From the NCBI GenBank assembly GCA_002269645.1, contig NIVC01001053.1, positions 1-64,000 of the forward strand: a DNA stretch of 64,000 nt. The letters are read 5' to 3'. Of this stretch, positions 10,509 to 35,537 are shown piece after piece. How positions within the stretch are numbered: the first letter of the stretch is position 1; each line of letters starts with the position of its first letter. The notes below the pieces were generated by a model. The model ran no database searches, had not been told where the DNA came from, and saw only the letters and a list, made by a program, of their open reading frames with translations. The DNA is from Macrostomum lignano. Lineage: Eukaryota. Made by a program: the position numbers and the translations under genes.

Positions 10509-10510
<2 letters not shown>

Positions 10511-10550
<40 letters not shown>
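10511..10550. repeat. (CT)n microsatellite
   Basis: Direct reading. Confidence 0.95.
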
Positions 10551-10554
<4 letters not shown>

Positions 10555-10966
10555 CTCAATACCAGCATTGAAATGCAGCTCGCTGAAAAATAGGAGGATT
10601 ATAAAATTCAGTCGGCACTACAGCATTTGTGCATAGCTGGATAATGGAGGCTCACCCAGGCGAACAGGCAATGCCTGATGCAGTTTTTCTTACCTTTGAG
10701 CTCTTTAGCTGGGACAGCTGCTGTTTGCTCACATTCATTCGCAGGGGGGGATAGGTGATAAATTCCATTAAGCATTTAGGCAGACTAGCAATGCTCAACG
10801 CTATTTATCTTGTACTGTATGTATGCATGTGTACTGGCTAGTTCGGGAAATCGTCATGGTTACAAGCTTGGGGGATATAGCAGGGTTTTTCTAAAATTGG
10901 CACCTGAACATTTCGTTAAATTGAAACAATCGAATTTCCTATTTTGTCTTGTTTTCCTTGGCTACC

Positions 10967-11267
10967 AATAATAATAACGACTGATTACACCTGCCTAACG
11001 GGCAGATGTGCAACCGACAGCTCAGCCGCAGCTATTGCGCGGCGCATCTGAAGGCTGCGTACGGCTGTTCAGTCCAAGGACTGGGGTCGCCACACAGCCT
11101 CAATTACCTCAGCTAATGCTGGCACCCATTTTTACAGCTGGGTTAACTGAAGCAATGTAGAGTTAGGTGTCTTGCTCAAGGACACAAATTGTTTCAGTGG
11201 GATCGGGAATCGAACCTCCAACCTTCAAGTCGTGAGTCCGACGCTCTAACCACTAGGCTACAACCCC
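10967..11267 (-). mobile_element. tRNA-derived CORE-type SINE, copy 2 (best preserved)
   Basis: Reverse complement reads ggggttgtagcctagtggttagagcgtcggactcacgacttgaaggttggaggttcgattcc, then the CORE-like block and a (tta)n tail. Confidence 0.88.
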
Positions 11268-11353
11268 TAAATTAGTTAACAAATTTGTAACATAAAAGAT
11301 GGTCACAAAATGTTCACGTACTGTAAAAATGAAAGGTATTCAAAACATTCAAA

Positions 11354-12015
11354 CCCCAATGCAGGCACCTGGAGAATGTGCCATTCACCCCAATGCAGAC
11401 ACCTGGAGAATGTGCCATTCACCCCAATGCAGACACCTGGAGAATGTGCCATTCACCCCAATGCGGGCATCTGGAGAATGTACCATTCACCCCAATACAG
11501 GCATCTGGAGAATGTGCCATTAACCCCAATGCAGGCACCTGGAGAATGTGCCATTCACCCCAATGCAGACACCTGGAGAATGTGCCATTCACCCCAATAC
11601 AGGCATCTGGAGAATGTGCCATTCACCCCAATGCAGGCACCTGGAGAACGTGCCATTCACCCCAATGCGGGCATCTGGAGAATGTGCCATTCACCCCAAT
11701 GCGGGCATCTGGAGAATGTGCCATTCACCCCAATACAGGCACCTGGAGAATGTGCCATTCACCCCAATACAGGCACCTGGAGAATGTGCCATTCACCCCA
11801 ATGCGAGCATCTGGAGAATGTGCCATTCACCCCAATACAGGCACCTGGAGAATGTGCCATTCACCCCAATGCGGGCATCTGGAGAATGTGCCATTCACCC
11901 CAATGCGGGCACCTGGAGAATGTGCCATTCACCCCAATGCGGGCACCTGGAGAATGTGCCATTAACCCCAATGCGGGCACCTGGAGAATGTGCCATTCAC
12001 CCCAATGCGGGCACC
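11354..12015. repeat. 34-bp minisatellite, ~19 copies (caccccaatgcgggcacctggagaatgtgccatt)
   Basis: Visible period; ORFs in all three frames are repeat artefacts. Confidence 0.95.
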
Positions 12016-13274
12016 GTTAATTTTCGTCGAAAATCCATGATGAAATTTTATGCTTTGTTATAAAAAACATTTAATATGCACTGATTGCTACTATAAGTAG
12101 CACTAGTAAAAATATATTTTGAAACTTTTTGCTTTCGCTATGCACATTGAAACAGCATGAAATATTTCTACACAAAGGGATTTCTTGCCTGCTTTCTACT
12201 CAGTAGCTATGCGGACAGCCCTGGCAACACAGCGGAAGCAGGTGCGGTCACCTGTTGCAAATCAGAAGCCAAATGAAATTAGGTCCGGGCGGAGATTGAA
12301 GAAGAAGACGAGCTAAAGAGCCGCGACTGTCTTTTGTTGACTGGAACTCTGAGAAGTGCATAATAAAATTGTATGCTTCATACGTAGAGGCATTAGGAGC
12401 TATACAATTTTCACTATTGTCAAGAAGACGCTGCTCAAGGCGAATAGCTGCTGCACGAGGCTCCGCCCACTTTTATGCAGGTCAAATCGAGCGCAATGCT
12501 TCATGCACCAACGGGAAGAAAGGGCGGTTCCTCATCGGGTTCGAGCAGTGTGCACCGGTTTATCGATCGGTCAGAAACTAAGGAACGACCCGCAGTCGTC
12601 CCCATCCTGATGAACCCTGAGCAGGCACACGCTCACATCGGGTATAACAGCGACCCTGACTTTCCCATTGTCAGGAATGTACACACCGTCGGGAGCTTGA
12701 ATCACGTGACCTCGCCGACAATTGGATTGCCTGATCAGACGCTACATCTGGACCCAAATCTGTAAAAAGCTACAAGAGCAAAACGATGAAATCAATGCAT
12801 GACAAGAGTTGAAAATTAAATTAAGAATTTTTCTTTGGTGTCTTTTGCGACGAATCAATCGATGATGAAGGGTGCCGGGTGAGCACTGCTCAATACAGGA
12901 ATACAGAATGTCACCAGCCATTGGCTGAGGCATAGGGCAGCGAGAAATCCAATAGGCCGTAGTTCACAAAAGAAGAGTGCGGGAGCAAAGAAAGCAAAAG
13001 TGGTTGGCGGGCAAATCGCCTCTACTAAGGGAAAACCTGTCGCCATACCCAATCTCCGCTGGCTAGAGGGGAGGCGATCAGGTCAATAACTTGGCAGAAG
13101 CGCAGCACTGGAGCGCTCGCTGCTCCGCTGCGCAAACATTGAGGCGCATTCCGCGCACACAACTGCCTGCCAAGAATAAATTATTTAAGAGTCGACTCAG
13201 GCCCCAGGACTCGGACTTCATGCGGCCGCATCATCGATGGTAGCAGTTGAAGGCGGGAGGCAGTCTACAGTGCC

Positions 13275-14562
13275 ATGTCGTGCCGAGAGTCAGTCCAGAC
13301 AGCTTCCTCGCTGCAATCCTGGCAAAAGAAGCAACAGCGCCAGGAGCGGAAACTGCGGAAGCAGCAGCAATCGCGCAGAGACTGGGACAGGGACTACAGG
13401 TGCCAATTCGTTGCGGCCGTGATTCTGGGAGCGATTGGAGCCGCTGTGAGCTGCATCGGAGCTGGACTAATAGTCTATGGCTTGCCCACTGCCGACCGAC
13501 TGCAAAGGGAGATGGTCAGCCTCACAAAAGAGGAGGCGGTTGCTGCGAAGGTTGGTAAAAATCATATCTATTGTTTTCATGAGTGAAACCTTCCACAATG
13601 TGGTAGACGAGCCTAAATGTATGGACAGCACCCGATCCTTGACGATGACAGCCTTCTTTCTTTGTTAGAAAGCTCGCTAACTAATGTGCTTTATCCAGCA
13701 AAGAGGCAAGCAGTCAACGCACATACGGAGTCACAAGCTCACACAGGGTTTACATCGGCACTGACTTTCTCATGGTCAGGCACTATATACACACTGTTAC
13801 ATGTACATCGCACAGCCGACAGCACCCAATCCTACAGTCAAATCCTACAGTACAAATGGAAAAATAGAGCTCAATAACTCCGTGTGTAACACTGTGTAGC
13901 TGAGCAACTCAATTCCACCAAATCAATCAATTCGAGCTCAGGTGAGCCTCATGCTGTACGGCAGGCTTGGCGGCCTCCTGCTGGGCGTTGGCCTGTTCCT
14001 GCTGATTGTGCTGGCCGTGCTGGGCACCGAGTATCGCCAGCACCTGCGCCGGCAGCGGAGTCCAAGTGAGGACGCCCGGACGATCGGGCGCCGACGGCTG
14101 TACGCTGACATTCTTCGCGGCCTGCGGTTCCTGTGGCAGGACAGCGAAGAGGCGGAGGAGAATCACGACAATGGCAGTAGCAGGAGCGGCTACTCCAGAT
14201 CGAGACGGGGCAGCTCATGCTCAAGACGGCTGCCAGTTGCAGCAGTTAATGATGCCGTTGCTGGGGCCAGCAGCATCCAGCTGCAGCAGCAGCACCGTTC
14301 GAGAGCAAACTCGATGCTTCAAACAGCTGAGTCGCCAAAGAGGGAGGGCGAAGATTCCAAGGCTTCTAAGCAACAGGAGCAGCAGGGGTCTGGACTACTG
14401 AGACCCAGCTGGCGAGCCAACGAGGCTTTCGATGCTTCGGACGAGACCGCAGCATGTGAGCCCCCGGCAGAGATGGGTGCAGCGGGGCGTGCTCAGGAAT
14501 TTACCTTGGGCCCGGGGGGAGCAGTGTATCAAATCCCAATAAAGAACCCTAAAGTATCGTAA
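13275..14562 (+). CDS. Uncharacterised two-transmembrane protein, ~298 aa; exons 13275-13550 and 13942-14562
   Basis: GT donor at 13551 and AG acceptor at 13940-13941, both phase 0; joined ORF has two hydrophobic segments (FVAAVILGAIGAAVSCIGAGLIVYGL; LGGLLLGVGLFLLIVLAVLG) and GC-rich codon usage. Confidence 0.7.
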
Positions 14563-17064
14563 ACCTTAGAAAGTAAAAAGTTCAAAAACGCGAAAGACTT
14601 GACTTTAAAAAAGGAAAGGATGTTCACTTGTTTGACAAGTCCCGAACTTGGTGAAATATTGTACATCGAGGTACGGTCGCCATCAAATGTAGCCAAAGTT
14701 AGTGAGACGCTATCTTTGCTCTGCGTACTTCGCGTGCATTGTAGCGGGCCGGATTGCTATTGTGAAATTTCAAAGGAACGGGAGGGTACGATATAGAGTC
14801 TTTATGTAGCCCTCTGGCCGGTGTTATACTTTCGGATATCCGTGTCTTGTGTTATCCGCCCAGATAGTACAAGTGAAATATTGTACTTTGAAATATTGAA
14901 ATATTGTACTTATATTGTACTTTCTGATCTCCCTGGACATTGGAAGTGCTTTCTGATCTCCCCCCCCGGATAGTTCAAGCATTTCAAAGTATCCGGTCCG
15001 GATATCTCAAGCTACTTGCAGTCTCTCCCCCCGGAAGTCACAAGCTAGGTTGAAGCATCCGGCCGAGAAACTAATGTTTGCTTTGAGATATCCGGATTGG
15101 TGATGTCCGGGTCAAAGAACGATAATGTATTAAAAAATGCTTTTTAAAACAAAAAGACTAAGTGAAATTGTTTCAAGGATGTAAAATTACTGAGTTAGGA
15201 AAAATTTAAATGCTTCTAAATACTATATATAGTTTCGTGCATGAAATGCCCCTGGTCATTGGTCATTTACAAGCGTCTCGCTGCCCATTAACTGCACTTT
15301 GAGATGCGTGCTATTGTCAACATTTTTGCGTGTTATTGTCCATTGGTATATTTTAAGATAACAGAAAACTAACAAGAATACGAAAGATAACAGGTTTAAA
15401 AAAGCTATTTAACGAAATTGTACGATTTTTTGGTCGCCTATTGAAGTCGCTAATTGTTCAACACCCTAGTAGAGATTGTTCCTTAACAGGCAAATATAAT
15501 AAATTTAATCACTGTCTAAAAGAGTCCTCACTCGAATTCAATATTGATTGAATTATTAGTGCCATCGATACGGACGCGCATTTCTTTGGACGGACTAGCT
15601 TGCATTTCAACTGATCGTCCTCTATTTGCCACCTGGTGCTAGCGGGCAGACCTTGAATCTCGATGCCATCTAACTGGAGCAACTCATCACTCAGATCACC
15701 GCTATCAGCTAGTTGTTCTTCGAACTCCTGTAAATCGTCAAGTTGTTCGGTCTCCTTCGCCAGGAAGTTCATGAAGTGGTCGATAAGCTCGCGACATTCA
15801 TCGTAATGACATCCAACTCATTATCAGTGACGCCACTAATCTCATCCGTTGGCAGAGCTTTGTAGTTAAGTAACGGTGGTAGAAGTCTAGTTGATTTCGA
15901 TATGTCACGCTTTTAATTAAAAATGTTCTGCATTTAGCATTTGTCTGAGCTTGATATCTCGCCTCAGCTTCGACTTTAATACAAAAACTCTGGCTTTCCT
16001 ATTAAAATTAAAATTGTCTATGGCCATAAACTCCCCACCCCAAGAAGTTCTTCCAAGGCTGCGTGTTATTGTCTTTCCAGACCATAGACTACTAGTCTAT
16101 AGGGAAACACTGTCAATGCACTCATCAGCGCCGCGGTAATACAATATCAAGCATCCCGACTGCAGAAGAATATACCATTTTCCTTTAGTTTGTCATCCCC
16201 TTTCGACCCCCAAAAACTTATATATACCTAATCTTCAATAGACCCCCATGCCAATGATGCTCTTCATTCCCATTTAACATGACTCGACGTGCAGTGTTTT
16301 GCTCTTTTCCCTACTCCATCCTCCGTAAAGAGCACACGCCGCTGCTGTTCTGGGCGCCTTTTCTTGCCGCAGTTCCGGTTTCTCAATTTTTAAAAAAATT
16401 AACCGTCTTGAAAGAAGAGGCTTTACTTTTCTCTCGAATTTTGCGCTTCAAATTGTCCCTCACTCATGGCCAGAAAGTCTCCGGGAATTTCGACGTCCTC
16501 GTCCAATACGCTTAAGTATACATTGCGCAATTACACTGAGAATTCATCTAGAGCTCACCCCTGCTAGGTGCAGATATATTAGCTGGTTGCATATAAAAGT
16601 CGTGTGAATTCCTGCACATGCAACCAGTAATTGCTTGGCAGAGGTTTAGCCCCGTGGCTGTACACCGCTCATGTTCATTTTACCGTACCATTCTCCCGTA
16701 GATCTCAAATCAAAGAGAACTCAAGACACACCTATGTTATGCCTTGCGTTGTCAGGGACTGGAGATCGCAAAGCAGAGTCACATTTGTCTTGCGATCTCC
16801 GGCCGGAGACTGCAAGCGCACGGAGATTGCAAAGCCCAACACCGGCCCGTGAATTAGAGGGTCCTCGGGCTCGTGTACTGACCCTTGACCGGCGACTGGC
16901 CAATCATAGCGACCGCGGCTCAAGCTGAGGCATCAAAAAGGGTTAGACGCGATTGGCTAAGCCAGCATGTCTATAGACTGACTTGGGGGAGGAGGGTGGG
17001 TGCAACACCAAACCCTCGCGCCGACACAATTGGGACTTTCTCTAGAGGCGCATTCTCTGTAATG

Positions 17065-17326
17065 TAATAATAATATAAAATAACTGATTACAACTGTCCT
17101 AACGGGCAGATCGATGTGCAACCGACAGCTCAGCCGCAGCTATTGCGCGGTGCATCTGAAGGCTGCGTACGGCTGTTCAGTCCAAGGACTGGGGGCTCGC
17201 CACACACCCTCAATTACCCCAACTAATGCTGGTACCTCATGTTAAATGTCTTGCTCAAGGACACATGGGTCGAGAGTCAAACCCCCGACCTTGAATTCAA
17301 CGCACTAACCAATAGACTACAACCCC
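17065..17326 (-). mobile_element. CORE-type SINE copy 3, internally deleted
   Basis: Aligns with copy 2 but lacks the ~33-bp ttttacagctgg...tgtaga block, and the tRNA head is shortened. Confidence 0.8.
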
Positions 17327-17383
17327 ACTACAGTGTGAATGAGCCTAAACTCGGAGCAATTTTTATCTCTATATTACCCACAG

Positions 17384-17727
17384 TCAAGAGGCAGAGCCCC
17401 CGCAGCGCCCAGTCGATGCGCATGACCGCCCGCGATGCCTCCGCAGCCGGTCGACAGGGCGGGGTGGCTTCCCTGCAGCAGCTGTTCAGCGTTGAGCTGG
17501 AGTTCTCGCGCTTCTCTGCCAACCAGAACTCGACGCGAACCAGCAACCTGGAGCTGACCGATTTGGTTGATAACGACTTTGAAGCGGCCTTCGCCAGCCA
17601 CAGCTGGCAGGCAAGCGAGTCGACTTCGCCTAACAAAGTACTGCATCAGTCGGCTGCGAGTACAGCAGATGAGGCAGCTAGCAAGCTCAACGCACAGATC
17701 GAACCGGATGGGGCTCCGGAGTTTTGA
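17384..17727 (+). CDS. Probable terminal coding exon of an unidentified gene
   Basis: Acceptor ttacccacag ending 17383; GC-rich open frame (KRQSPRSAQSMRMTARD...PDGAPEF*) in AT-rich flanks; upstream exons not identified. Confidence 0.4.
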
Positions 17728-17852
17728 GCAAATCATTCATTCTACTGCACAGGCAGATGGATTATAGTTACAACTCTATTCGAAATTTACATGTGCTTAT
17801 CTTATTTGACTAGGCAGAAAGACTAGCTTTTATAGTAGGCTAGCTATCTCCC

Positions 17853-17997
17853 CTGACACCTCAGCCATAGTCACCACTATCATAGACCCACAGCAGTGGC
17901 ACCTCAGCCCCAGTCAGAGCTACTATAGACCCACTGCAGTGACACCTCAGCCCCAGTCGGCACTACCATAAACCCACTGCAGTGACACTTCGGCCCT
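17853..17997. repeat. ~46-bp tandem repeat, ~3 copies
   Basis: Recurring gacacctcagccccagtc...atagacccactgcagt. Confidence 0.8.
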
Positions 17998-18564
17998 AAA
18001 TTAATCTTAAGTAAGATGTCAATGTACTTTAGTAATTAAATCCCAACATGCCCCACTTTTTAATATTTAAAAGTCGACTAAAATATTTTATAATTTGTAT
18101 GTACAAACATAAATGACCTTAAAAATTACATATCACAAATTAACAAAAGCACCGTCGAAAATTTTCCAATCTACAATCGGTTGCCACAAAAAAATCAATG
18201 AAACAATAACAAGGCAAACGATGCTACTTTTATTCAGTAATATAATTCAAACATTAGCCAAAAATTAATAAAGAAATGAGCAGTCGCTGTGAACAAACTA
18301 ACTTATTATTCGCTATCTCCAAAGAATCATAAAAAGCAAATTAGGAAACTGTAGAGTATTAAAATTATTTGCTAAATTAACCAATAGTAGCCTAATTAAT
18401 TAACAGAGCCTACTGTATATGGTCGCACTGTGGATGACTGCAGATCAATCAATGGTATACCAATGTAACGGACCGTTCTAAAACACGCAATGGTATTCAA
18501 TTTTAACTAAGGTCAATTAAAGCCACTTTAGACACTTGAAAAACATTGATAGCTTGATAGGTCT

Positions 18565-18900
18565 AGGGGTCCAGGTTAGGGCTAAAGGGGTTTAGGTGAG
18601 GTTTATGGGATTTAGGTGAGATTTATGGGGTTTAGCGTGGGGTAAAGAAGAGGTTTAAACAGGTTCAGGTTCGGGCTAACATGAGGTTTAAACGGGTTTA
18701 GGTTAGGGTTAAGGTGAGGTTTAGATTATGGTTTAGGTGAAATTTAGGTTAGGGTTTAGGGTAGTATTAAGGTGAGGTTTATGGGGTTTAAGGGTAGGGT
18801 TAAGGTGAGGTTTATGGGGTTTAAGGGTAGGGTTAAGGTGAGGTTTATGGGTTTAAGGGTAGGGTTAAGGTGAGGTTTATGGGGTTTAGGTCAGGGTTAT
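18565..18900. repeat. Degenerate TTAGGG-like G-rich repeat with a ~29-bp higher period
   Basis: gggtagggttaaggtgaggtttatggggtttaa units; similar short tracts at 5381-5415 and 22321-22400. Confidence 0.8.
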
Positions 18901-19087
18901 TAATGAAGGCAGGTTAGAGCAGTCAACTGGCAGTTCATGTATGATTCTGCGAAAGCAAACGCAGATCCTGTCAACTGTCAATTATTTCAAGAATCGAATG
19001 GACACTATGCATATGTACGAGCATAGATCGTATGCAAATCAAGAAGTCAACACGCCAGTCCCAGCTACCCCGCCAGGTTCGCACTGC

Positions 19088-20528
19088 TCAGAGCTTGGCA
19101 GATGAGGCAGCCACAGCTTTGCGAAAGACCTTCTCCAGTTTCATAGCTACGCCCATGTTGCCTGTGATGCGCAGCTTGCCAGCCATGAAGGCGCCAGTGG
19201 CGGACAGCTTGCCGGACACCAGCTGCTGCAAGTCTGCCGATTTCATTGTCATGCAAGTGTCCGGCTTCTCTGTCGAGCCGCTGTCGCCCGGACGAATTTC
19301 GGACAGACCGCCGGGCATGGATTTCAGATTGAGCAGCCAACTGCGGTTTAGGTCCGTGAGCTGAAGCTCAACCAGGCCTTTGACCAGACCCACCGCCTCC
19401 GCGTCTATGGCTGTGGCAAGGTGCTTCATGGAGGCTTCAACGTCTGCGCCAGGCTGCTGCTGGCCGCTCTGGGCTCCCGAACTGGCGCTGGTTGCGGCTG
19501 CTGCAATTACGGATACAGCTTTTGCCGTTTATTGCGCCTCCCGGCTTCTCTACCGGTCATCGCGCCCCCTGGCTTCCCTACCGGTCAATGCGCCTCCTGG
19601 CTTCCCTACCGGTCATTCAGCCTCCTGGCTTCCCTACCGGTCATTCAGCCTCCTGGCTTCCCTATCGGTCATTGCGCCTCCTGGCTTCCCTACCGGTCAT
19701 TCAGCCTCCTGGCTTCCCTACCGGTCATTCAGCCTCCTGGCTTCCCTATCGGTCATTCAGCCTCCTGGCTTCCCTACCGGTCATTCAGCCTCCTGGCTTC
19801 CCTACCGGTCATTCAGCCTCCTGGCTTCCCTACCGGTCATTCAGCCTCCTGGCTTCCCTATCGGTCATTCAGCCTCCTGGCTTCCCTACCGGTCATTCAG
19901 CCTCCTGGCTTCCCTACCGGTCATTCAGCCTCCTGGCTTCCCTACCGGTCATTGAACTTCCTGGCTTCCCTACCGCTCACTGAGCCTCATGGATTCCCTA
20001 CCGCTCACTGAGCCTCATGGATTCCCTACCGCTCACTGAGCCTCATGGATTCCCTACCGCTCACTGAGCCTCATGGATTCCCTACCGCTCACTGAGCCTC
20101 ATGGATTCCCTACCGCTCACTGAGCCTCATGGATTCCCTACCGCTCACTGAGCCTTATGGATTCCATGGTCATCGAACATCATGGGTTCCATGGTCATTG
20201 AGCCTCATGGATTCCATGGCTATTGAGCCTAGCCTCCTATCGACCATTAAGCCTAGCTTCCAATCCAGAAGCCGCAGCAAACAAAAGACCATGACAGGAC
20301 TCACGCTTGGCTGCGTCCGGCTCGTCAAGGAAAAAATCAGGCAGCAGCTGGCCGCCTGGCACGCAGCTGTACTGCTCAAGGTCCTTGTCGGTAAGGCCAC
20401 CCTCGCGGCGCAGCACGTCGTCGTCGATGCAGAACTGGCCGGAGAAGGTGCGCGAATCTTTAGTGAGTACCAGGTAGGCGGCGTCAGCCATAATCTCCGG
20501 CTTGCGGCACTGGGAGGCCACCTGGAAT

Positions 20529-20615
<87 letters not shown>

Positions 20616-20653
20616 CTAGTAGTAGTACTAGTAGTAGTTGTAGTTGTAGTAGT

Positions 20654-20698
<45 letters not shown>

Positions 20699-20704
20699 AT
20701 AGTT

Positions 20705-20774
<70 letters not shown>

Positions 20775-23700
20775 CAGTAGTAGTAGTAGTTGTTGTTGTT
20801 GTTGTTGTTATTGTTGTAGTAACACAGCAAAGTTACCTCATCTCCTCCAGCCAGCATCTTCATCGCGGCAGTGAGAATGGCGGTCCTTGGCCACAGGGCA
20901 TTGACAGCGATGCCGTACTTGGCAAGCTCGGGAGACATGCCCAGGACGCACATGCTCATGCCGTACTTGGCCATGGTGTAGCCAACGTGGTCCTTGAACC
21001 AGCGCTGCCGCATGGACAGTGGCGGGCTAATATTGAGTATATGCGGATTAGCAGATTTGGACAGGTAGGGAATGCACAGCTTGGAGCACAGGAAGGTGCC
21101 GCGAGAGTTAATGCCGTGCATCAGATCGAAGGATTTCATAGTCAGGGTCTCCGTGTTCACCAGGTTGATTGCGGATGCGTTGTTCACCAGGATGTCAATG
21201 CCGCCGAACTGAGCCACGGCTTCGTTCACCGCCTTCTGCACCTGGTCCTCCATTCTGGAGTGGGAGGCTATTGGGATTAGACACACTTGGGATTTAGGGA
21301 GGGATTAGGGCCTATATTGGGGATCTGGGTGGGATTAGAGACTATATTGGGGATCTGCGGTGGGATTAGAGACTATATTGAGAATCTGGGTGGGATTAGT
21401 GACTATATTGGGGATCTGCGGTGGGATTAGGACTATATTGGGGATCTGCGGTGGGATTAGGGACTACATTAGAGATCTGCGGTGGGATTAGGACTATATT
21501 GGAAGTAGGGATTAGGGACTATATTGGGAGTAGGGATTAGGGACTATATTGGGGATATGCGATGGGATTAGGGACTACATTAGAGATCTGCGGTGGGATT
21601 AGGACTATATTGGAAGTAGGGATTAGGGACTATATTGGGAGTAGGGATTAGGGACTATATTGGGGATCTGGAGTGATATTAGGACTATACGAGCTATTGG
21701 GGATCTGCGATGGGATTAGGGACTATATTAGAGATCTGCGGTGGGATTAGGACTATATTGGAAGTAGGAATTAGGGATTATATTGGGAGTAGGGATTAGG
21801 GACTGTATTAGGGATCTGCGGTGGGATAGGGATTACGGACTGTATTGGAAGTAAGGATTAGGGATTATATTGGGATCTGAGGAAACAATCAGAAACACTT
21901 GGAGATCTGGAGTGGGACTAAGGACTAAATTGAGGATCTGAGCGATAAGGGAATTAAGTTAAGAATGTTGGCTAAGCGCAGGTAAGCAGCTTGCCTGATG
22001 TCAACAACGCATGGCAGCGCCTTGCCACCAGCTTTTTCAATCTCCTCAGCGGCAGTGTAAATTGTGCCAGGCAGCTTGGGATGAGCGGTGGCAGTCTTGG
22101 CGGCCACAACTATGTTGGCACCGTCGCGGGCTGCGCGCAGGGCGATTGCGAGCCCAATTCACGGCTGGCTCCAGTGATGAAGAGCGTCTTGCCGGCCAGC
22201 TTCCTAGCGAATTACAGGGGAAAAATGAATAAAATCGAAGTACTTGGAGTGTATGAAGATTGACGAGTTTACATACAATACACTTTTCCTACTTTTAAAT
22301 GCCAACCATTTGATTGCCGAGGTTTAGGTTAGGGTTGGGGTTTGTGTTTAGGTTTGGCTTAAGTTTTAGGTTGGAACTTAGGTTAGGGTTGAGATTTATG
22401 TTTAGGTTCTAAGATTCGGTTTAGTAGAATAGGTTCAAGGCTACAAGTAGATTCAGCAGTTAATTTGTGGTTGCCAAAAGATGCTAGCAGCAAAAAGTTG
22501 TCAACCCCCTTTATTATATTAGGAGTACTTTATTTTGTTGTAAATGGTCAACAATTCAATTACTATAGAAAGATTAAAACATTTTTATATGTATGTACAA
22601 TATATGATTGTACATTTTATATGTATTTTGAATAAGAATCATTTTTCGCTTCAGACTGACTCATTATACCTTTACTCTAGTCTAGCCTAGCCTATTTATT
22701 CTTCTTTGCTACTGAATTGAAAGTAGAAAGCTGTTTTACTAAGCATACATGCCTGAGTGGCCCCATCTAGTTCTTTTAGAATCTATGGTTAAAGCCAACC
22801 TAGGAAAATTAAAATAGATAGCCTATAGTAAACACATAATACTTGAAACACATGAAAATATGATACTTGATGTAATCAAAGATCTTACTTAGGAATACAA
22901 AATCAACCATTTATTGAGCAAAACTTTATTTATTTTTTTACATTGAGCATCTGGTCTTTATTTTACACATGCTTAACAACAAGCCAAGTAGACCAATGAT
23001 AAATTTCAGAATTCAAGCAATACTATTCTAATATATATTTCTTGCCAAATGTCTGAAAAGTTATTGCTTTTTTATTTGTTTTTAACTGTTATACTTTAAA
23101 ATTTTGCCATAACTAAAATTTTCCTGTATCTATATCTCAATTTTTCTTATAACCAACTTATATCCATTTCAGTATCCAAAAAGCAAGGAAATTTTCTTTA
23201 ACTTTCTATAACTTTCTTGCAATGGTTGCACTATGCTAATAGCTAGTGATACCTGGAAACAATATCATAGATAGGGCATTGGTATATTTTGCTAGTTATG
23301 GAAACTATAGAAATGCAACTATGAATAGTGCTCAATAGGCAGTGCAAAATGCATCTGTGTTGCTTAATGCTTATCAACTTGACTATTTTTTTTCTTCCCA
23401 TCTTCTCCTTTCTCCTTTCCCTTCTTTCCTCTTTTCCTTCTCTTTCCCCTCTTTTCTCTCTTTTTTAAACTTTTAAATAACTTAAGTAGGCCAATAAAAT
23501 ATCCAATGCTTTCTGAGATCTTGGGTGAAAGCAATGGCCTACTTGACTTGTCATTGGTTTCCAAGAAGATTGGGTAGCAAAAGCCTCTTGAATTGTTTCA
23601 GAATGTAATTAATTGCCACCATAGAAATGCCACCATAATTCTTTGTGGTGGCAAATGCTAGATAACCAAAATTGGCTTTATCTGTCTTAGCTATAGCCCC

Positions 23701-29219: not shown

Positions 29220-31443
29220 TCACCCATCAGCGAGTGCCCTCAGCTCGCTCAGCTGGCGTTCCAACGATCTGATTCGCCTGTCCCGGTCTGTCACCATCTG
29301 CCGCAGTCGCCACACCAGCTCCACACTGCCGCTGAATCCGCCGCCGCCGCCCGGCCTCCGCCGCAGGCGTCTCCGACGCAGATGATGATGATGGCAGCAG
29401 CAGCCGCATTCACCCATCGCCTCGGCCTCGTCGACCGCCGCTGCGGCAGAGTCGCCAGTCTTGACTGTTGCCGCTGCTGCGTTCTCGTCGTCGCGATCGT
29501 CCGACGACGGCGGCGGCGGCGGCTCCGACGAATGTCGCATCAGGCCGAAGCCGCAGTCGACATCCTCGTCTGCTTCATCGCAGTCTTCTTCGTCCTCTTC
29601 GTCATTATCATCGTCGTCGCAGTCGCGGTTGTCCTCGCAGTCGGCGCCGTCTGGATCGGATTGGCTGGGCGGCCGGCGGGGTGGCAGCCTGGAGGAGCCG
29701 TTGCTGCTGCTAATGAGGAATTTTCAGGTGCGAAACATGAGCTCAGATGCAGCTTCTGGGCACTCGCGTGCACCTGAGTGCGCGTGTAAATTCCCCTGCT
29801 AGACTTTTATCGGCTGAGAAATTCCCTGTGAGACTTATTTGATCGAAAAATTCCCCGTGAGACTTATCTGACCGGGAAATTCTCGGCGAGACTTTTACCT
29901 GGCCGAGAAATTCCCCGTGAGACTTATCTGACCGACAAATTCCATGTGAGACTTATTTTACAGTCGAATTCCCCCGTGAAACTTATCTGACCGACGAATT
30001 CCCTGTGAGACTTATTTTACAGTCGAATTCCCCCGTGAAACTTATCTGACCGAGAAATTCTCCGCGAGACTTTTACCTGGCCAAGAAATTTGCCGTGAGA
30101 CTTTCACCTGACTGAGAAATTCCCTTCCGAGGCAAATTGACTTACACGGCAGTGCTCTGCGTCGGCGCCAAAGGTGACGCACAACGCATGGCTACACGCC
30201 TGTTATGATGGTGATGGTGATGATCACCGCGAATTCTGCGCTTGGCTTTTAGATGCAACAACTGTTGCTGCTGCTTCTTCTTCTTCTTCGTCTTCAGCGC
30301 TCGCTTTACCGGCGCGGCGGCGCCGAGATTTGCGGGGGCCATCGCCCCATGCTCCGAAGGAGCGAGAGACATTTTCCCGGGTTCCGGAGGAGCTCCTCGT
30401 GATCGTTCCCGACCAGGGCCATCCGTCGAGCGTCTCCCCGGTGGCAGTGAAGTAGCGCATGGGCGCTGTCGTCGAGTTCTCCGCAGTCCGGGCACTGCGG
30501 ATTATCGATCATACCGAATCGGTGCTGGGTCTCGGCGCAGAGCATCGTCATGCCTGCGCGAAGCTGGCACACCGCCGTTTGCTCCCGCCGGTCTCTCGCT
30601 TTGAAGTCCGGCCAGGGTTGCGGCAGGGTTTCTTTCTCCAGGGTCCGGCGATCGCGGCGAATGGCTGCTTTTGCGGCGTTGAAGGAGATGGGCACTTCCT
30701 CTTGGGGCAAGCCTCTTGCCATGCCGGCCGCGCGGTCCGCCGCTTCATTAAGGCTGATGCCGCAGTGGGCTGGCACCCAGATTAGTTCTATGTCGGCCGT
30801 TTCGTTGATGTCTAGCATGTGGCGCCAGCAGTCCGTACCGGTCTTAGTCGCCTGGGCTAGTGGTCCGGCCCCTAGTGCTGTCAGTGACGATAAAGAGTCG
30901 CTACATAGGCGAATCTTCTTTTCGCTCGGGCTGCGGTTGTTCTTAATAAAAACCAGTGCTTCGCGGATGGCTATCATTTCTGCGTCAAATGAGCTACAGA
31001 TGATTCCGGCCGGGGCCTTGCGCCAAGTTCGTGCAGGTTATAGCGGCGCTGCCGCCGGGTCCGGTGCCGTCCGCCACCGATCCGTCTGTCCACACGCTGA
31101 TGTCAGCCTCAGGCAGTGACTGCAGAAACTCCGTTGCCGCCGCGCTCCGGGACTCCTGGGGGTCCGTGCGGCGGCATCGGGCCGAGATGTCCAGGCGGAT
31201 GTTAATGTCCCGTGTGTCGCACTCCCACGGCGGGATGCCGGGGCTTACCGGGTCGCCTCTTTTGTGGGAATCCAATATGGCAACCGACGGCAGCTCCAGT
31301 GCCGCCCTCCTCCAGCAGTTCCGGAAGGGGCGGGTGGCGTCCCGCGGGTCGATGAGGTTCAGCGAGTTCGGCTGTGCTTCGTCGTCGGCGCCGCCGTCTC
31401 CGTGGGTGCGGCCGTGATCGCGTGCCAAAGCTTCGTAGGTACG

Positions 31444-31474
<31 letters not shown>

Positions 31475-31834
31475 ACTGCAGCCGGAGCTGAATTTCAGTC
31501 TGCGATGCTGTTGTTGCTGCTCCTGCTGCAGCGGCTGGTGCTGAGGCCGGCAAGGCGACGTTGAATGATCCCGACGACGGGTGGCGCCGCCGAACAGTGG
31601 CAGCTGCTGACAGCTGGCGCCGCCAGGAGCCGATGCTCCCAGCAGCAGGTCGGCGCTGGAGTGCCTCTGGTACATGGCTGACACAGCTGCACTGCGGAGC
31701 CTCACTGAACCAGTTGGCTGGGAACCGCCAGCACAAGCAGCATCAGGCCGATTGGCCACCGTCGGGACAGTCGCCGGAATGTCGCTGCTGTCCTCCTCGC
31801 GGTCAAGACTCTCAGCTGATAGAGAGGAAGAAGC
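29220..31834 (-). CDS. Uncharacterised low-complexity protein (polyQ, polyH, acidic tract, C-terminal coiled coil); exon A 31834-31444 + 30275-30146 interrupted by a LINE; exon B 29709-29220
   Basis: Acceptor ttaacttcag ending 31835; frame restored across the TSD; GTAAGT donor at 30145 (phase 2) matches acceptor ttcctcattag ending 29710; ends VELVWRLRQMVTDRDRRIRSLERQLSELRALADG*; 5' end uncertain. Confidence 0.65.
29800..30125. repeat. Degenerate ~30-bp intronic tandem repeat (gaaattccccgtgagacttatctgaccga)
   Basis: Direct reading. Confidence 0.85.
30276..31443 (-). mobile_element. 5'-truncated non-LTR retrotransposon (I-group-like) with RNase H and CCHC zinc knuckle, (GAA)n tail and 12-bp TSD
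   Basis: WTDGS...AEM...CSDS...WVPAHCGISLNEAADRAA; CPDCGELDDSAHALLHC; frameshift near 31035; TSD gttgctgctgct at 30264-30275 and 31444-31455. Confidence 0.92.
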
Positions 31835-31934
31835 CTGAAGTTAAAATTCTCGATAAATTAACAATGGCAAAAGTACTTTATGATTGAAATCTGTCAAACT
31901 GAAGACTAACATTACAATAGATATAGATCCCCTG

Positions 31935-32620
31935 TGGGTCATGCAGTGTGGCAGTCTATATGGGTCATATGCAGTCTGATGACTGCGGGTCATGTAGTGT
32001 GACAGTCTATTTGAGTCATATGCAATCCGAAGGTCATGCAGTGTGACAGTCTGTTTGGGTCATATGCAGTCTGATGACTGCGGGTCATGTAGTGTGACAG
32101 TCTATTTGGGTCATATGCCATCCGAAGGTCATGCAGTGTGACAGTCTGTTTGGGTCATATGCAATCCGAAGGTCATGCAGTGTGACAGTCTGTTTGGGTC
32201 ATATGCAATCCGAAGGTCATGCAGTGTGACAGTCTGTTTGGGTCATATGCCATCCGAAGGTCATGCAGTGTGGCAGTCTATATGGGTCATATGCAATCTG
32301 ATGACTGCGGGTCATGCAGTGTGGCAGTCTATATGGGTCATATGCAGTCTGATGACTGCGGGTCATGCAGTGTGGCAGTGTTTATGGGTCATATGCAGTC
32401 TGATGACTGCGGGTCATGCAGTGTGGCAGTGTTTATGGGTCATATGCAGTCTGATGACTGCGGGTCATGCAGTGTGGCAGTGTTTATGGGTCATATGCAG
32501 TCTGATGACTGCGGGTCATGCAGTGTGGCAGTGTTTATGGGTCATATGCAGTCTGATGACTGCGGGTCATGCAGTGTGGCAGTCTATATGGGTCATATGC
32601 AGTCTGATGACTGCGGGTCA
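31935..32620. repeat. Minisatellite with interleaved 44-bp and 51-bp units
   Basis: gggtcatatgcaatccgaaggtcatgcagtgtgacagtctgttt and gggtcatatgcagtctgatgactgcgggtcatgcagtgtggcagtgtttat. Confidence 0.93.
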
Positions 32621-33189
32621 ATTCTAGTCCACTGCAAGGCTAGGTTACATGCACATTCCCGAACTGTGTATGGGTCTTTAAAAATAAGAATCGAAAGCTT
32701 CTGCTGGAAAACAGTAACACAGAATTAGTCTTTATTTGTTCAATTTGGTCAAATACAGGTAAATCAACGGCTTATTGGGCTACTATAAGTAGTCAATATT
32801 TATTGTTTCCATTCACCATGCTTAACAACAAGCAAAAAACGTTCAAATTAGCTATATACATTTGAGAGGAGCATATTGAAATTAAATAAAGCTCTATGCT
32901 GGTGATCGACTGAGTTTAGTTAATTATTCATTTGGCAATAAAGAGTAGCTCAACAGACATTAGCTGACAGAATCCAGTGCACTACAGAATGTTTAAGCAT
33001 CCTAAATATTGAATAAATTAATAATAGTCGACAATTTTTAAAATATTAAAGATCAGACTAGAAAAAAGCAAATTATAAGAGAAACATAGCATTCCTTTAA
33101 GGCAAAAGTGGATAGCATCTGGACTACTAAAATCTATCACATAGCTACATACATACAAACTATTTTTTAGATATGGATATTGGAAGAAT

Positions 33190-33450
33190 AGTGAGGGATC
33201 CCTACCCCAGAGTAGTGAGGGATCTCTGCCCCAGAGTAGTGAGGGATCTCTGCCCCAGAGTAGTGAGGGATCTCTGCCCCAGAGTAGTGAGAATCTCTGC
33301 CCCAGAATAGTGAGGGATCTCTGCCCCAGAGTAGTGAGGGATCTCTGCCCCAGAGTAGTGAGGGATCTCTGCCCCAGAGTAGTGAGGATCTCTGCCCCAG
33401 AGTAGTGAGGGATCTCTGCCCCAGAGTAGTGAGGGATCTCTGCCCCAGAA
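33190..33450. repeat. 24-bp minisatellite just downstream of the RGP1 stop codon
   Basis: gagtagtgagggatctctgcccca, ~11 copies. Confidence 0.93.
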
Positions 33451-33508
33451 GAGTGAGTCATGCAAGGACACCCGATAAAAAATCTGCAGCCGTGAGACAT
33501 GGACAGTT

Positions 33509-35537
33509 TCAAGCCAGCACAATGGAACAGCTGGGGGCGTAGGCAGACACGCTAGACGCAGTGATAGCCTGAGGACTGCAAGCGTACACAGTGATGGGCA
33601 ATTCCCATTCAAAGTGCTCGGTGGCCACAGTGGCTGGCGGTTGCCATAGAGTTGCCAACGGCTGCAGCGGGGCCGGCCGATCGTTAATTGGCTGACGTAG
33701 GGTGGCAAATTCGAATGCCAGCTTCCAGGCTAAATCAGCGTGCCTAGTAGCAAAACTGGGGTTAGACTGGGCTTGAGATGCAACAATAACTGAGCAGCTT
33801 GCAGATCCAATGCGGCCAGCTGTTCAACAGCGTGAGTACAGGTATGATAGGCAACCGGTTTGCGTTCTCCGCTGTCCTCCGTCTGGTACACAGTTTCCAC
33901 ACTCTGTAGCGACACTTTCACGTCCAGGCACTGGGCTGTACAGTCGGCAAAGTCGAATACGCCCAGTACGTTTTCGCCAAGCTTATAAGCGGTTTTGAAT
34001 AGGCTAAACCGGGTGACACGGCCGCCCTGCGAGTTGCAAATGTTGTAGCCGCTCAGGCACTTGGAGCCTGTGATGGCCGATATCTGGGCAAGGATGGTCT
34101 CCTCCTGCGCGATGGGTAGTGCTGGTAGTTAAATTAACTTTATGACTATCTGGACACCATAGTACTAATAAATGCTAAATAACAACTATTAAAGATCAAG
34201 TGACAATTAAACGCACCTGAGATGCTTCATCAGTATTGGCCGGATGCCAATCAACAAACGGATTGGCTTTATTAGCCTGAGACGCGGCGCCTCCATCATC
34301 GCCAGTGCTCAGGGTTTGGTCAATCCGTTTGATTCCGTGCACAGACAGTACACGAAATGGCAACCGAAGCAGCTGGGTTTTGCCTAGCAACGAGCTCACG
34401 CCCAACACCAGCTTGTAGGAGTAGCGAATTCCCGCGCCTCGATGGCTGGGCGGAGCGTCCCAGGGCAGCGACTCCTCGTATTCGTCTGCGAGGGGGGGGC
34501 GTGAAGAGGTGATCAAGTGAAAAGTGACGCCTCTTCTGCCGGCCCCAGAGCTTCTATGAAACGGTACCTAGCAGCCAAGAAGCGTTCCCAGAGTCAATTG
34601 CGTTGCGTCTTAAGTGTATCCGCGTCCCTTAATGAATTAGAATCGCATTTTGCGTTTATAACAACTCTATTTAGTCTACTCGAGTCAGTAGAAAGTTAAG
34701 CGCTAACACAACGACTCATGGACGATTTTTTCGCAACTATTTTACGATTCTACAACTCTGACTCGTGATGCGCGCGTGACTCAACAGTCGTTTCAGTCGT
34801 TAAAAACGTTTATACATTAGCGGGAAAGCCAGACACTTTAGCGTCTAATTATAAAGTTTGTGTGTCTGTACTAAATGGGCAACAGATGTACAACCAACAG
34901 CTCAGCCGCAGCTATTACGCGGCGCATCTGAATTCTGAAGGCTGCCTACGACTATTCAGTCCAAAGAATGGCAGGGGTGTCGCCACACACGCACCCTTAA
35001 TTACCCCAGCTAATGCTTGTACGAAATTTACAGCTGGGTGAACTGAAGCAATACAGAGTTAAGTGTCTTGCCCAAGGGCACAAATTGTTCCGAGTGAGTC
35101 GAGAATCGAACCTCCGACCTTCCAGTCGTGAGTCCGACGCTCTTACCACTAGGCTAAAACCCTGTTAACTCAAACAGAGCTTTTCCAATAATTAATCAGA
35201 TCAATATGATAACTGCTCTAGACTACTAGTTGATTATGTTTGCAAAGCACAAATAACAAGATCAGCATGGCTCTAGCAGCATACAGATAGATAATATAAA
35301 AGTACCAGTTACCACTGGATTGCACCACAGTACTTACAGAACTTTGACTCGCCGGGAGGCAGCACCAAATTGCAGAACAGTATGCTTGGCTTAGTTGATA
35401 TGTAAGTAAAGCCTGTTTCGCCACGATTAGCTATGAATGAGGTCTCGCCATTAACTGCTTGAGATGCTTTTGCAGGCGCTTTAGTTATTGAGCACATGCA
35501 AATAAGCTGTACACTGGCCCATGCCAGCATTGGACTC
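33509..35537 (-). CDS. RGP1: RGP1 (RAB6A-GEF complex partner, Ric1-Rgp1); exons 35537-35338, 34485-34217, 34104-33509; first coding exon not located; apparent 1-nt deletion at 33758-33761
   Basis: LAWASVQ...RGETG...STKPSILFCNLVLPPGESK; LPWDAPPSHRGAGIRYSYKL...LLRLPFRVL; FKTAYKLGENVLG; WKLAFEFAT; FEWELPITVYACSP, all recalled as matching RGP1; splice phases agree. Confidence 0.88.
34875..35163 (-). mobile_element. CORE-type SINE copy 4, in an RGP1 intron
   Basis: Same tRNA-like head and CORE block as copy 2, more diverged. Confidence 0.85.

What the first reader, a model, noticed from the sequence alone, without database searches (positions are those of the whole stretch)
30146..31834. LINE inserted into a polyglutamine-coding exon, targeting a CAG/CAA tract
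A 1168-bp RNase H/zinc-knuckle non-LTR fragment with a (GAA)n tail sits between two copies of AGCAGCAGCAAC (minus strand). Removing the element and one TSD joins ...CSQQQQQQQQQ to QLLHLKAKRRIRGDHHHHHH... in frame, within one exon that has a proper acceptor (31835) and GTAAGT donor (30145). The GT at the insertion's 5' edge and the AG at its tail would give an out-of-frame product, so this allele looks disrupted rather than rescued by splicing. The TSD made of pure CAG/CAA repeat raises the possibility of a microsatellite-targeting family that preferentially hits polyQ exons (inference from a single copy).
Basis: partly seen in the sequence, partly recalled or inferred. Interest (0 to 1): 0.8.

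Follow-up and report, generated by a model that had tools for sequence, protein, structure and literature searches.

The report
Recent LINE insertion splitting a polyglutamine exon
One of three genomic copies of an unannotated flatworm (Macrostomum lignano) gene has been interrupted by a recently inserted, 5'-truncated LINE fragment in its glutamine-repeat region; this is an ordinary kind of mutation, proven here by two copies that lack the insertion, and nothing shows that the element seeks out such repeats.

Summary
On the minus strand, a 1168-bp fragment (31443-30276) lies between two exact copies of AGCAGCAGCAAC. It carries an RNase H domain (Pfam E=3e-11), a C-terminal CX2CX7HX4C motif, a 14-nt 3' UTR and a GAAGAC(GAA)5 tail.

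The window is Macrostomum lignano contig NIVC01001053.1, from the Mlig_3_7 assembly of a neopolyploid genome with three paralogous copies. Both other copies of the locus lack the element. L004 matches the predicted empty site exactly, at 100% over 1571 bp and with a single copy of the 12-mer. The more diverged L005 is also empty. The insertion is therefore real and recent.

The interrupted exon is probably coding:
- Its open frame is in phase with a second exon.
- Its splice motifs match the species consensus.
- It begins at a trans-splice-type acceptor where the spliced leader's terminal ATG would be in frame.
- Exons differ from L005 at 1.7% of sites against 9.6% for flanking sequence (p=4e-12), and exon indels are multiples of three.

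Against this, the gene has no homologue and no annotation. The filled copy would stop prematurely 82 codons into the element.

Targeting of CAG/CAA tracts cannot be tested, because no other copy was reachable. A distant relative shares the (AAG)n tail but does not sit in a repeat.

The parts
31835..31840 (-). Acceptor motif CTTCAG immediately upstream of exon 1. It is a candidate spliced-leader trans-splice site, and an in-frame TAA lies two codons upstream (31843-31841).
   Evidence: Sequence. It matches the M. lignano trans-splice acceptor motif [T/C]TNCAG (PMC8629364) and is conserved in L005.
31444..31834 (-). Host exon 1, upstream part (130 codons plus 1 nt). It ends in the CAG/CAA (polyQ) tract 31474-31444.
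   Evidence: Open in frame 0. 100% identical to L004, and 2.2% substitutions against L005 with one 12-nt in-frame indel.
31444..31455 (-). Upstream copy of the target-site duplication AGCAGCAGCAAC
   Evidence: It is present once only at the empty sites of L004 and L005.
30276..31443 (-). 5'-truncated non-LTR (LINE) retrotransposon fragment, 1168 bp, in the same orientation as the host exon. It comprises the ORF2 C-terminal region, a 14-nt 3' UTR and the tail.
   Evidence: Absent from L004 and L005. 33% and 30% identical in a MAFFT alignment to the metagenomic RNase H proteins P0001 and P0002, the latter RT+RNase H.
30723..31104 (-). RNase H domain of the element, with D-E-D-H-D intact. A +1 frameshift lies in the C4 run 31015-31012.
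   Evidence: Pfam PF00075, E=3.2e-11. Catalytic residues align with P0001 and P0002. Removing one C gives a continuous 378-codon frame.
30444..30494 (-). C-terminal Cys/His motif CPDCGELDDSAHALLHC (CX2CX7HX4C)
   Evidence: Sequence. C317, C320, H328 and C333 are invariant in the alignment with P0001 and P0002.
30276..30295 (-). 3' tail GAAGAC(GAA)4GA. The repeat continues as (GAA)5G into the first two bases of the downstream TSD copy. The element's TAA stop is at 30308-30306.
   Evidence: Sequence. Relative L003 ends with stop + 18 nt + (AAG)4, and relative L001 with stop + 12 nt + (CAAGA)3.
30264..30275 (-). Downstream copy of the target-site duplication AGCAGCAGCAAC
30146..30263 (-). Host exon 1, downstream part (QLLHLKAKRRIRGDHHHHHHNRR...), ending at the donor |GTAAGT (30145-30140)
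   Evidence: In frame with the upstream part once the element and one TSD copy are removed. The donor matches the species consensus GT[G/A]AG.
31202..31204 (-). Premature stop (TAA) reached by the host reading frame 82 codons into the element
   Evidence: Translation through the junction
29220..29709 (-). Host exon 2. It has a tandem TAG/CAG acceptor, so the exon starts at 29709 or 29706. It encodes an acidic run, a His run and a C-terminal heptad-like segment, and ends with TGA at 29222-29220.
   Evidence: In phase with the exon 1 donor: GT + C = GTC. 1.2% substitutions against L005 with one 3-nt indel. The CAG acceptor is conserved and the TAG is lost in L005.

Best explanation
A non-LTR retrotransposon of the RNase H-bearing 'I group' inserted by target-primed reverse transcription into the CAG/CAA tract of a protein-coding exon, in one of the three paralogous copies of this locus in Macrostomum lignano.

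Inferred steps of the insertion:
- The bottom strand was nicked at the left edge of AGCAGCAGCAAC.
- The 3'-OH primed on the (GAA)n tail of the element RNA.
- Reverse transcription stopped, or was resolved, 1168 nt from the 3' end. This gives a 5' truncation inside the linker between the reverse transcriptase (RT) and RNase H domains.
- Staggered second-strand cleavage 10-12 bp downstream produced the duplication.

Host gene and consequence:
- The host is an unannotated, lineage-specific two-exon gene downstream of RGP1. It is probably SL trans-spliced at 31835, with the leader's terminal AUG in frame.
- In the filled copy the frame runs 82 codons into the element and stops. About 200 residues are lost, including the conserved C-terminus, so this copy is most likely null.
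- The two intact copies buffer the loss.

Landing in a glutamine-repeat tract is most simply a single chance event, perhaps helped by 2-of-3 base complementarity between the (AAG)n tail and (CAG)n.

Shown here: the insertion, the TSD, the empty sites, the RNase H domain, and exon constraint.
Inferred: the TPRT steps, trans-splicing, loss of function, and buffering by the other copies.
For: Insertion:
- Exact 12-bp flanking repeat, and a tail directly abutting it.
- L004 is 100% identical over 1571 bp to the reconstructed empty site. The more diverged L005 is also empty.
- The window and L004 differ by only 10 SNPs in 7.8 kb downstream, so the insertion is young.

Element identity:
- Pfam RNase_H, E=3.2e-11.
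- Its only relatives are RNase H (P0001) and RT+RNase H (P0002) ORFs with the same C-terminal Cys/His motif.
- Those relatives have the same short 3' UTR and AAG-rich repeat tails.
- The frame is open throughout apart from one homopolymer frameshift.
- RNase H is known in LINEs from the I-group clades (PMC4640811). The I element ends in TAA repeats (PMC3747384).

Organism and copy structure:
- The RGP1 query hit PAA75267.1 of M. lignano at 100%, and its cluster holds three NCBI loci.
- L006 equals the window.
- Three paralogous subgenomes are described in PMC10733133.

Host gene:
- The exon 1 frame is open and in phase with a 160-codon exon 2.
- GC by codon position follows the pattern of known exons in the window.
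- Exon against non-exon divergence to L005 is 17/987 against 55/572, Fisher p=4e-12. Exon indels are 12 and 3 nt; intron indels are 28, 118, 56 and 2 nt.
- Acceptor and donor match the species motifs, and the SL ends in ATG (PMC8629364; PMC12582326).
Against: - No RT or endonuclease is present in this copy, so the clade cannot be assigned.
- No second copy of the family was found anywhere, so its activity and target preference are unknown.
- The host ORF has no homologue and no called CDS in any of the three copies.
- pN/pS against L005 is 0.46 from only 17 substitutions, with one-sided p=0.09.
- The protein is largely low-complexity sequence.
- L004 is a mosaic of L005-like and window-like sequence, so assembly problems at this locus cannot be dismissed.
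- The CAG/CAA tract is only 33 bp of about 62.8 kb, or 0.05%. A purely random hit is therefore a priori rare, although the finding was selected for being unusual.
Confidence: 0.8

Rival explanations
1. The element belongs to a family with a real preference for CAG/CAA or, more broadly, NAG triplet repeats. The preference would come from endonuclease specificity or from annealing of its (AAG)n tail to (CTG)n on the nicked strand. PolyQ-coding exons would then be recurrent targets.
For: - The insertion sits in the only CAG-rich tract of the window, 33 bp of 62.8 kb.
- (AAG)n and (CAG)n match at 2 of every 3 positions, as the sequences show directly.
- The distant relative in L003 has the junction (AAG)4|CAGC, the same four bases as here.
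- Microsatellite-specific LINEs are an established phenomenon: Waldo, Mino, Kibi, Koshi and Dong (PMC3812793).
Against: - There is a single copy only, chosen because it looked unusual.
- The L003 flank (CAGCTTCCAGTTAGC) is not a repeat.
- The tail unit is not the target unit. From my own recollection, not checked in a paper here, the best-known microsatellite-specific elements end in the repeat they target.
- No further copies were found in the window, in three M. lignano loci, or in the metagenome collection.
Confidence: 0.1
2. The flanking open frame is not a protein-coding gene. It could be a conserved non-coding or repeat-derived GC-rich segment, or part of the RGP1 3' region. In that case the insertion disrupts nothing translated.
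For: - No homologue was found among 1.84 billion representatives; the only hit is a marginal low-complexity match, E=9e-4.
- The word-index search found nothing.
- No CDS is called there in L004, L005 or L006, although RGP1 and HSDL2 are called.
- GC-rich low-complexity sequence keeps several frames open, including on the other strand.
- pN/pS is not significantly below 1.
Against: - The exons are about 6-fold less diverged than adjacent sequence (p=4e-12).
- Exon indels are multiples of three only.
- The ORF is intact in all copies apart from the insertion.
- Exon phases fit, and the splice motifs match the species consensus.
- The GC1>GC2<GC3 pattern is the same as in neighbouring genes.
- The last 70 codons are invariant between the paralogs.
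Confidence: 0.17
3. The presence/absence difference is an assembly artefact, such as a chimeric PacBio read, or a precise deletion in the other copies rather than an insertion here.
For: - The Mlig_3_7 assembly is redundant and error-prone at paralogs (PMC10733133).
- L004 is a mosaic contig.
- Homopolymer indels occur in this contig.
Against: - A chimeric join would not produce a repeat tail abutting a perfect 12-bp duplication of the target.
- Two independent copies, one of them diverged, would each need an identical precise deletion that also removed one TSD copy.
Confidence: 0.03

Closest known systems
I-group non-LTR retrotransposons (clades I, Nimb, Ingi, Loa, R1, Tad1, Loner, Outcast), with the Drosophila I factor as type example
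   Same: - An RNase H domain lies downstream of RT. The RT is seen only in relative P0002.
- A Cys/His motif sits at the C-terminus.
- The 3' end is a short tandem trinucleotide repeat rather than poly(A). The I element ends in (TAA)n, which is needed for precise initiation of reverse transcription (PMC3747384; PMC4640811).
- The copy is 5'-truncated and has a TSD.
   Different: - The tail unit is GAA, not TAA.
- Only the last 1168 bp are present, so RT-based clade placement is impossible.
- The nearest database proteins are only 33% and 30% identical (MAFFT) and come from unnamed metagenomic contigs.
Microsatellite-specific LINEs: Waldo (ACAY)n, Mino (AC)n, Kibi (TC)n, Koshi (TTC)n, Dong (TAA)n, Togen (TG)n
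   Same: A LINE flanked on both sides by a simple repeat. Such families are documented (PMC3812793; PMC4640811).
   Different: - Specificity in those families is shown by many copies in the same repeat. Here there is one copy.
- The target is a short 33-bp coding CAG/CAA tract, not a long array.
- The element's tail unit differs from the target unit.
- No CAG-specific family is listed in those reviews.
Gene-disrupting LINE insertions in coding exons, for example human L1 insertions in F8 exon 14 (my own knowledge, Kazazian et al. 1988)
   Same: A 5'-truncated, sense-oriented LINE with a TSD inside an exon, producing a premature stop and a null allele.
   Different: Here the genome carries two further intact copies of the gene because M. 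lignano is a neopolyploid, so the lesion is probably tolerated. No phenotype is known.
Metagenomic relative P0002 (locus L003, ENA ERZ23498825)
   Same: RT + RNase H + CX2C...H...C in one ORF, with a stop codon followed by 18 nt and an (AAG)4 tail. The first four flanking bases are CAGC.
   Different: It is 29-30% identical (BLASTP 29%; MAFFT 30%). Its host is unknown, its flank is not a repeat, and no TSD could be identified.

Membership tests
Non-LTR (LINE) retrotransposon, I group | RNase H domain with catalytic D-E-D-H-D, encoded in ORF2 downstream of RT | tested here: met
   Pfam PF00075, E=3.2e-11, residues 114-241. D120, E155, D182, H226 and D236 are conserved with P0001 and P0002.
Non-LTR (LINE) retrotransposon, I group | Reverse transcriptase domain | tested here: inconclusive
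   Absent from this copy because of the 5' truncation. The fragment starts in the RT-RNase H linker. Relative P0002 carries PF00078 upstream of RNase H in the same ORF.
Non-LTR (LINE) retrotransposon, I group | APE-type endonuclease at the ORF2 N-terminus | not testable with these tools
   No full-length copy could be retrieved.
Non-LTR (LINE) retrotransposon, I group | 3' end formed by poly(A) or a short tandem repeat, directly followed by target DNA | tested here: met
   GAAGAC(GAA)5 abuts the TSD. The relatives have (AAG)4 and (CAAGA)3 tails.
Non-LTR (LINE) retrotransposon, I group | Target-site duplication verified against an empty site | tested here: met
   There is one copy of AGCAGCAGCAAC in L004 and in L005, and two in the window.
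Non-LTR (LINE) retrotransposon, I group | Phylogenetic placement of RT (or RNase H) within a named clade | not tested
   No reference set (Repbase) was available, and the RT is missing.
Microsatellite-specific LINE | Most or all copies of the family lie in the same simple repeat | not testable with these tools
   Only one copy is accessible. Scans of the window, three loci and the metagenome collection were negative.
Microsatellite-specific LINE | This copy is flanked on both sides by the repeat | tested here: met
   It sits in a 33-bp (CAG)3CAA(CAG)5CAACAG tract. After the 3' TSD copy, however, only one more repeat unit (CAG) follows before unique sequence begins.
Microsatellite-specific LINE | The element's 3' end matches the target repeat unit | tested here: not met
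   The tail is (GAA)n and the target is (CAG/CAA)n, so only 2 of 3 positions agree. That this feature defines such families is my own recollection, not checked in a paper here.
Protein-coding exon of a real gene (host) | Open frame, compatible exon phases, species-typical splice signals | tested here: met
   169 + 162 codons are open and the phase GT|C fits. The donor is GTAAG, and the acceptors are CTTCAG and CAG. Chance of an open frame in mononucleotide shuffles is 0.005 for exon 1 and 0.013 for exon 2.
Protein-coding exon of a real gene (host) | Purifying selection between paralogs | tested here: met
   Divergence is 1.7% in exons against 9.6% in non-exon sequence, p=4e-12, and exon indels are 3n only. 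pN/pS is 0.46, which is inconclusive on its own (p=0.09).
Protein-coding exon of a real gene (host) | Homologue, annotation or transcript | tested here: not met
   There is no homologue and no called CDS in three copies. Transcripts could not be tested.

The most novel reading that the evidence does not exclude
M. lignano may harbour a currently active I-group LINE whose (AAG)n-tailed RNA primes preferentially on NAG triplet repeats such as (CAG)n. In that case glutamine-repeat exons would be recurrent insertion hot spots. Such hits would be tolerated, and visible as presence/absence differences between subgenome copies, because the neopolyploid genome keeps three copies of most genes.
Probability: 0.08. 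Interest if true: 0.6.

Novelty: new member of a known kind. Interest (0 to 1): 0.3.

Why it matters
- It is a clean, internally verified example of a very recent LINE insertion into coding sequence, with filled and empty sites in one assembly. That implies at least one RNase H-bearing LINE family has been active recently in Macrostomum lignano, a regeneration and stem-cell model whose published TE work concentrates on LTR elements.
- It points to an unannotated, probably trans-spliced gene downstream of RGP1.
- It illustrates how triplicated subgenomes can shelter null alleles.
- It does not, as it stands, reveal a new mechanism. LINE insertions into exons and microsatellite-targeting LINEs are both known.

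Tried and rejected
**Host peptide**
- The word-index search of 5.8 billion proteins with the two-exon host peptide found nothing.
- The exhaustive HMMER search of 1.84 billion representatives gave one marginal low-complexity hit, P0003, which I rejected as a homologue.
- Pfam on the host peptides gave only sub-threshold low-complexity hits.

**Other copies of the element**
- Exact look-up of nine window ORFs: none is in the collection.
- blastn and tblastn against the window and against L004-L006: only the element itself.
- The search for related loci in JGI metagenomes and an exact 24-mer scan of the 3' end: both empty.
- A search for a TSD around the relative in L003 found none.

**Other checks**
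- Rfam and ARAGORN on the window, used to guess the organism, were uninformative. The organism was identified through the neighbouring RGP1 gene instead.

**Ideas considered and rejected**
- The polyQ exon is not a 3' exon of RGP1. RGP1 has its own stop at 33512-33510, and its C-terminus aligns end to end with the annotated 391-aa protein.
- The element is not removed as an intron. Its 5' GT is GTACC, and the only consensus-like donor inside it (31248) is in the wrong phase.
- The difference is not a deletion in the empty copies.
Full report
**Observation**

On the minus strand the sequence reads ...(CAG)3CAA(CAG)5CAAC | CGTACCTACG...GCTGAAGAC(GAA)4GA | AGCAGCAGCAAC AGTTGTTG.... The 12-mer AGCAGCAGCAAC lies at 31455-31444 and at 30275-30264, enclosing 1168 bp. 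A further copy of the 12-mer sits 6 bp upstream in the same tract, so the repeat on its own was weak evidence for a target-site duplication. Removing the element restores the frame whether or not one repeat copy is also removed, because 12 is a multiple of 3.

**The inserted element**

The conceptual translation matches Pfam RNase_H (E=3.2e-11). All five catalytic residues are present, followed by a CX2CX7HX4C motif.

The reading frame is open over the whole fragment except for one +1 shift inside a C4 run (31015-31012). Deleting one C gives a continuous 378-codon frame that ends at TAA 30308-30306. Fourteen nucleotides of 3' UTR follow, then GAAGAC(GAA)5.

Only two relatives were found among 5.8 billion proteins, both from metagenomes and 29-33% identical:
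- P0002 carries RT + RNase H + the same Cys/His motif in one ORF. Its contig ends with stop + 18 nt + (AAG)4.
- P0001 ends with stop + 12 nt + (CAAGA)3.

Taken together, the features are: RNase H after RT, a C-terminal Cys/His motif, a very short 3' UTR, a simple-repeat tail, 5' truncation and a TSD. These are the hallmarks of an APE-type LINE of the RNase H-bearing I group (clade list in PMC4640811). The Drosophila I element likewise ends in a trinucleotide repeat, (TAA)n (PMC3747384). The clade cannot be named because the RT is missing.

**Organism and the empty sites**

The gene just upstream on the same strand is RGP1. A query built from its exons hit PAA75267.1 of Macrostomum lignano at 100% identity. 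The 90% cluster contains three NCBI loci from assembly GCA_002269645.1, and I fetched all three.

| Locus | Contig | Relation to the window | LINE |
|---|---|---|---|
| L006 | NIVC01001053.1 | The window itself, 100% over 16.3 kb | present |
| L004 | NIVC01000893.1 | Window 32620-31444 and 30281-22429 align contiguously, with an 18-bp overlap | absent |
| L005 | NIVC01001052.1 | More diverged copy, likewise contiguous | absent |

- At the site, L004 reads exactly ...CAGCAGCAGCAGCAGCAAC AGTTGTTG with a single 12-mer.
- L004 is 100% identical over 1571 bp to the window with the element and one repeat removed.
- Downstream, the window and L004 differ by only 10 SNPs and 5 indels in 7.8 kb.

The insertion is therefore real, has a 10-12 bp TSD, and is younger than a 0.13% split. 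Three paralogous copies per locus are expected, because the DV1 line carries three subgenomes, S, L1 and L2. Their estimated divergences are 1.39% between L1 and L2, and 1.58% between S and either L subgenome (PMC10733133). The assembly is known to be redundant (PMC5730564).

**Is the interrupted frame a gene?**

For:
- The empty exon (509 nt) is open in one frame. Its GTAAGT donor leaves GT, which joins the first base after a TAG/CAG tandem acceptor (29709 or 29706). That runs into a further 160-codon open frame ending at TGA 29222-29220.
- GC by codon position (0.68/0.54/0.62 and 0.72/0.53/0.74) follows the pattern of RGP1, HSDL2 and NIP7 exons in the window.
- Against L005, the exons show 17 substitutions in 987 aligned sites, whereas flanks and intron show 55 in 572 (Fisher p=4e-12).
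- The exon indels are 12 and 3 nt. The intron indels are 28, 118, 56 and 2 nt.
- The ORF is intact in L005, and the last 70 codons are invariant.
- The 5' acceptor CTTCAG fits the M. lignano trans-splice motif [T/C]TNCAG, and the donor fits GT[G/A]AG. The 35-nt spliced leader ends in ATG (PMC8629364).
- Flatworm SL terminal AUGs can serve as initiators (PMC12582326, citing Cheng et al. 2006).
- Exon 1 starts in phase 0 directly after the acceptor, with an in-frame TAA two codons upstream. An SL-donated AUG would therefore open the frame as M-ASSSLSAE... This start is an inference.
- The repeat-adjusted distance from the RGP1 stop is under 1 kb, which meets that paper's operon criterion. Operon membership is also an inference.

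Against:
- There is no homologue.
- No CDS is called at this position in any of the three copies, although RGP1 and HSDL2 are called.
- pN/pS of 0.46 rests on 17 changes (p=0.09).
- The predicted protein is mostly low-complexity sequence.

I put the probability of a real coding gene at about 0.8.

**Consequence**

In the filled copy the host frame continues ...QQQQQQQQQ PYLRSFGTRSRPH... and stops at 31204-31202 after 82 foreign codons. The element's 5' GT is GTACC, not a consensus donor. The only GTRAG inside the element (31248) is in phase 1, whereas exon 2 needs phase 2. Rescue by splicing is therefore unlikely and this copy is probably null. Two intact copies remain.

The same haplotype also has a 1-bp difference in RGP1, C4 against C5 at 33762. 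This shortens the annotated protein to 317 aa, against 391 in the other copies. Either this haplotype is decaying or the PacBio-based contig carries homopolymer errors. The same caveat applies to the RNase H frameshift.

**Targeting**

The tract hit is the only CAG-rich run in the window, 33 bp or 0.05%. (AAG)n pairs with (CTG)n at two of every three positions. The L003 relative also shows (AAG)n|CAGC.

Set against this, the case is a single, post-hoc selected insertion. L003's flank is not a repeat, and the tail unit differs from the target unit. No other copy could be reached. Microsatellite-specific LINEs are in any case already known (PMC3812793). I rate targeting at about 0.1.

**Verdict**

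The finding is a correct and now well-documented observation of an ordinary phenomenon: a new LINE family member and a young exon-disrupting insertion in a redundant genome. Its speculative part remains untested.

Noticed in passing
window 33762 (minus strand, RGP1 last exon): RGP1 has a 1-bp frameshift here relative to L004: a C4 run against C5. The annotated protein of this copy is 317 aa (PAA72896.1), against 391 aa in the other two. It is either a real lesion on the LINE-bearing haplotype or a homopolymer assembly error.
   Followed up: partly
L004 1-23740, against L005 and the window: L004 is a mosaic. It is 99.1-99.4% identical to L005 upstream (L004 1398-11601) but 99.5-100% identical to the window from window ~34913 downstream. 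This could be recombination or gene conversion between subgenome copies, or a chimeric contig.
   Followed up: partly
L005 13149-14750: A 533-aa hAT-type transposase gene (weak PF05699 match) lies on the opposite strand within the span of the L005 RGP1 gene (10001-20138). This stretch of L005 (~11.6-18.0 kb) has no counterpart in the window or L004, so it is another copy-specific TE difference.
   Followed up: no
window 29707-29712 and L005 ~23240: The exon-2 acceptor is a tandem TAG|CAG (NAGNAG). The TAG is lost in L005 (TCAACAG), while the CAG is conserved.
   Followed up: partly
window 33765-33790 and 30240-30263 (minus strand): CAGTTATTGTTGCATCTCAAGCCCAG in the RGP1 exon (QLLLHLK) resembles CAGTTGTTGCATCTAAAAGCCAAG immediately 3' of the polyQ tract (QLLHLK). 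This may be chance or an old local duplication.
   Followed up: no
window 11198-11267 (minus strand): Rfam tRNA match at 35 bits (gathering score 29) that ARAGORN does not call. It may be a degenerate tRNA gene or a tRNA-derived repeat.
   Followed up: no
window 29819-30124, 31932-32620, 33185-33457 and many others: Minisatellite arrays with 19-51 bp units fill the intron and intergenic space around the exons and differ in length between the three copies. The intron array, for example, differs from L005 by 28, 118 and 56 bp.
   Followed up: partly
window 20529-20790: A long (GTA)n microsatellite of about 88 units directly abuts the large HSDL2 exon on the minus strand (ORF 20693-21286).
   Followed up: no
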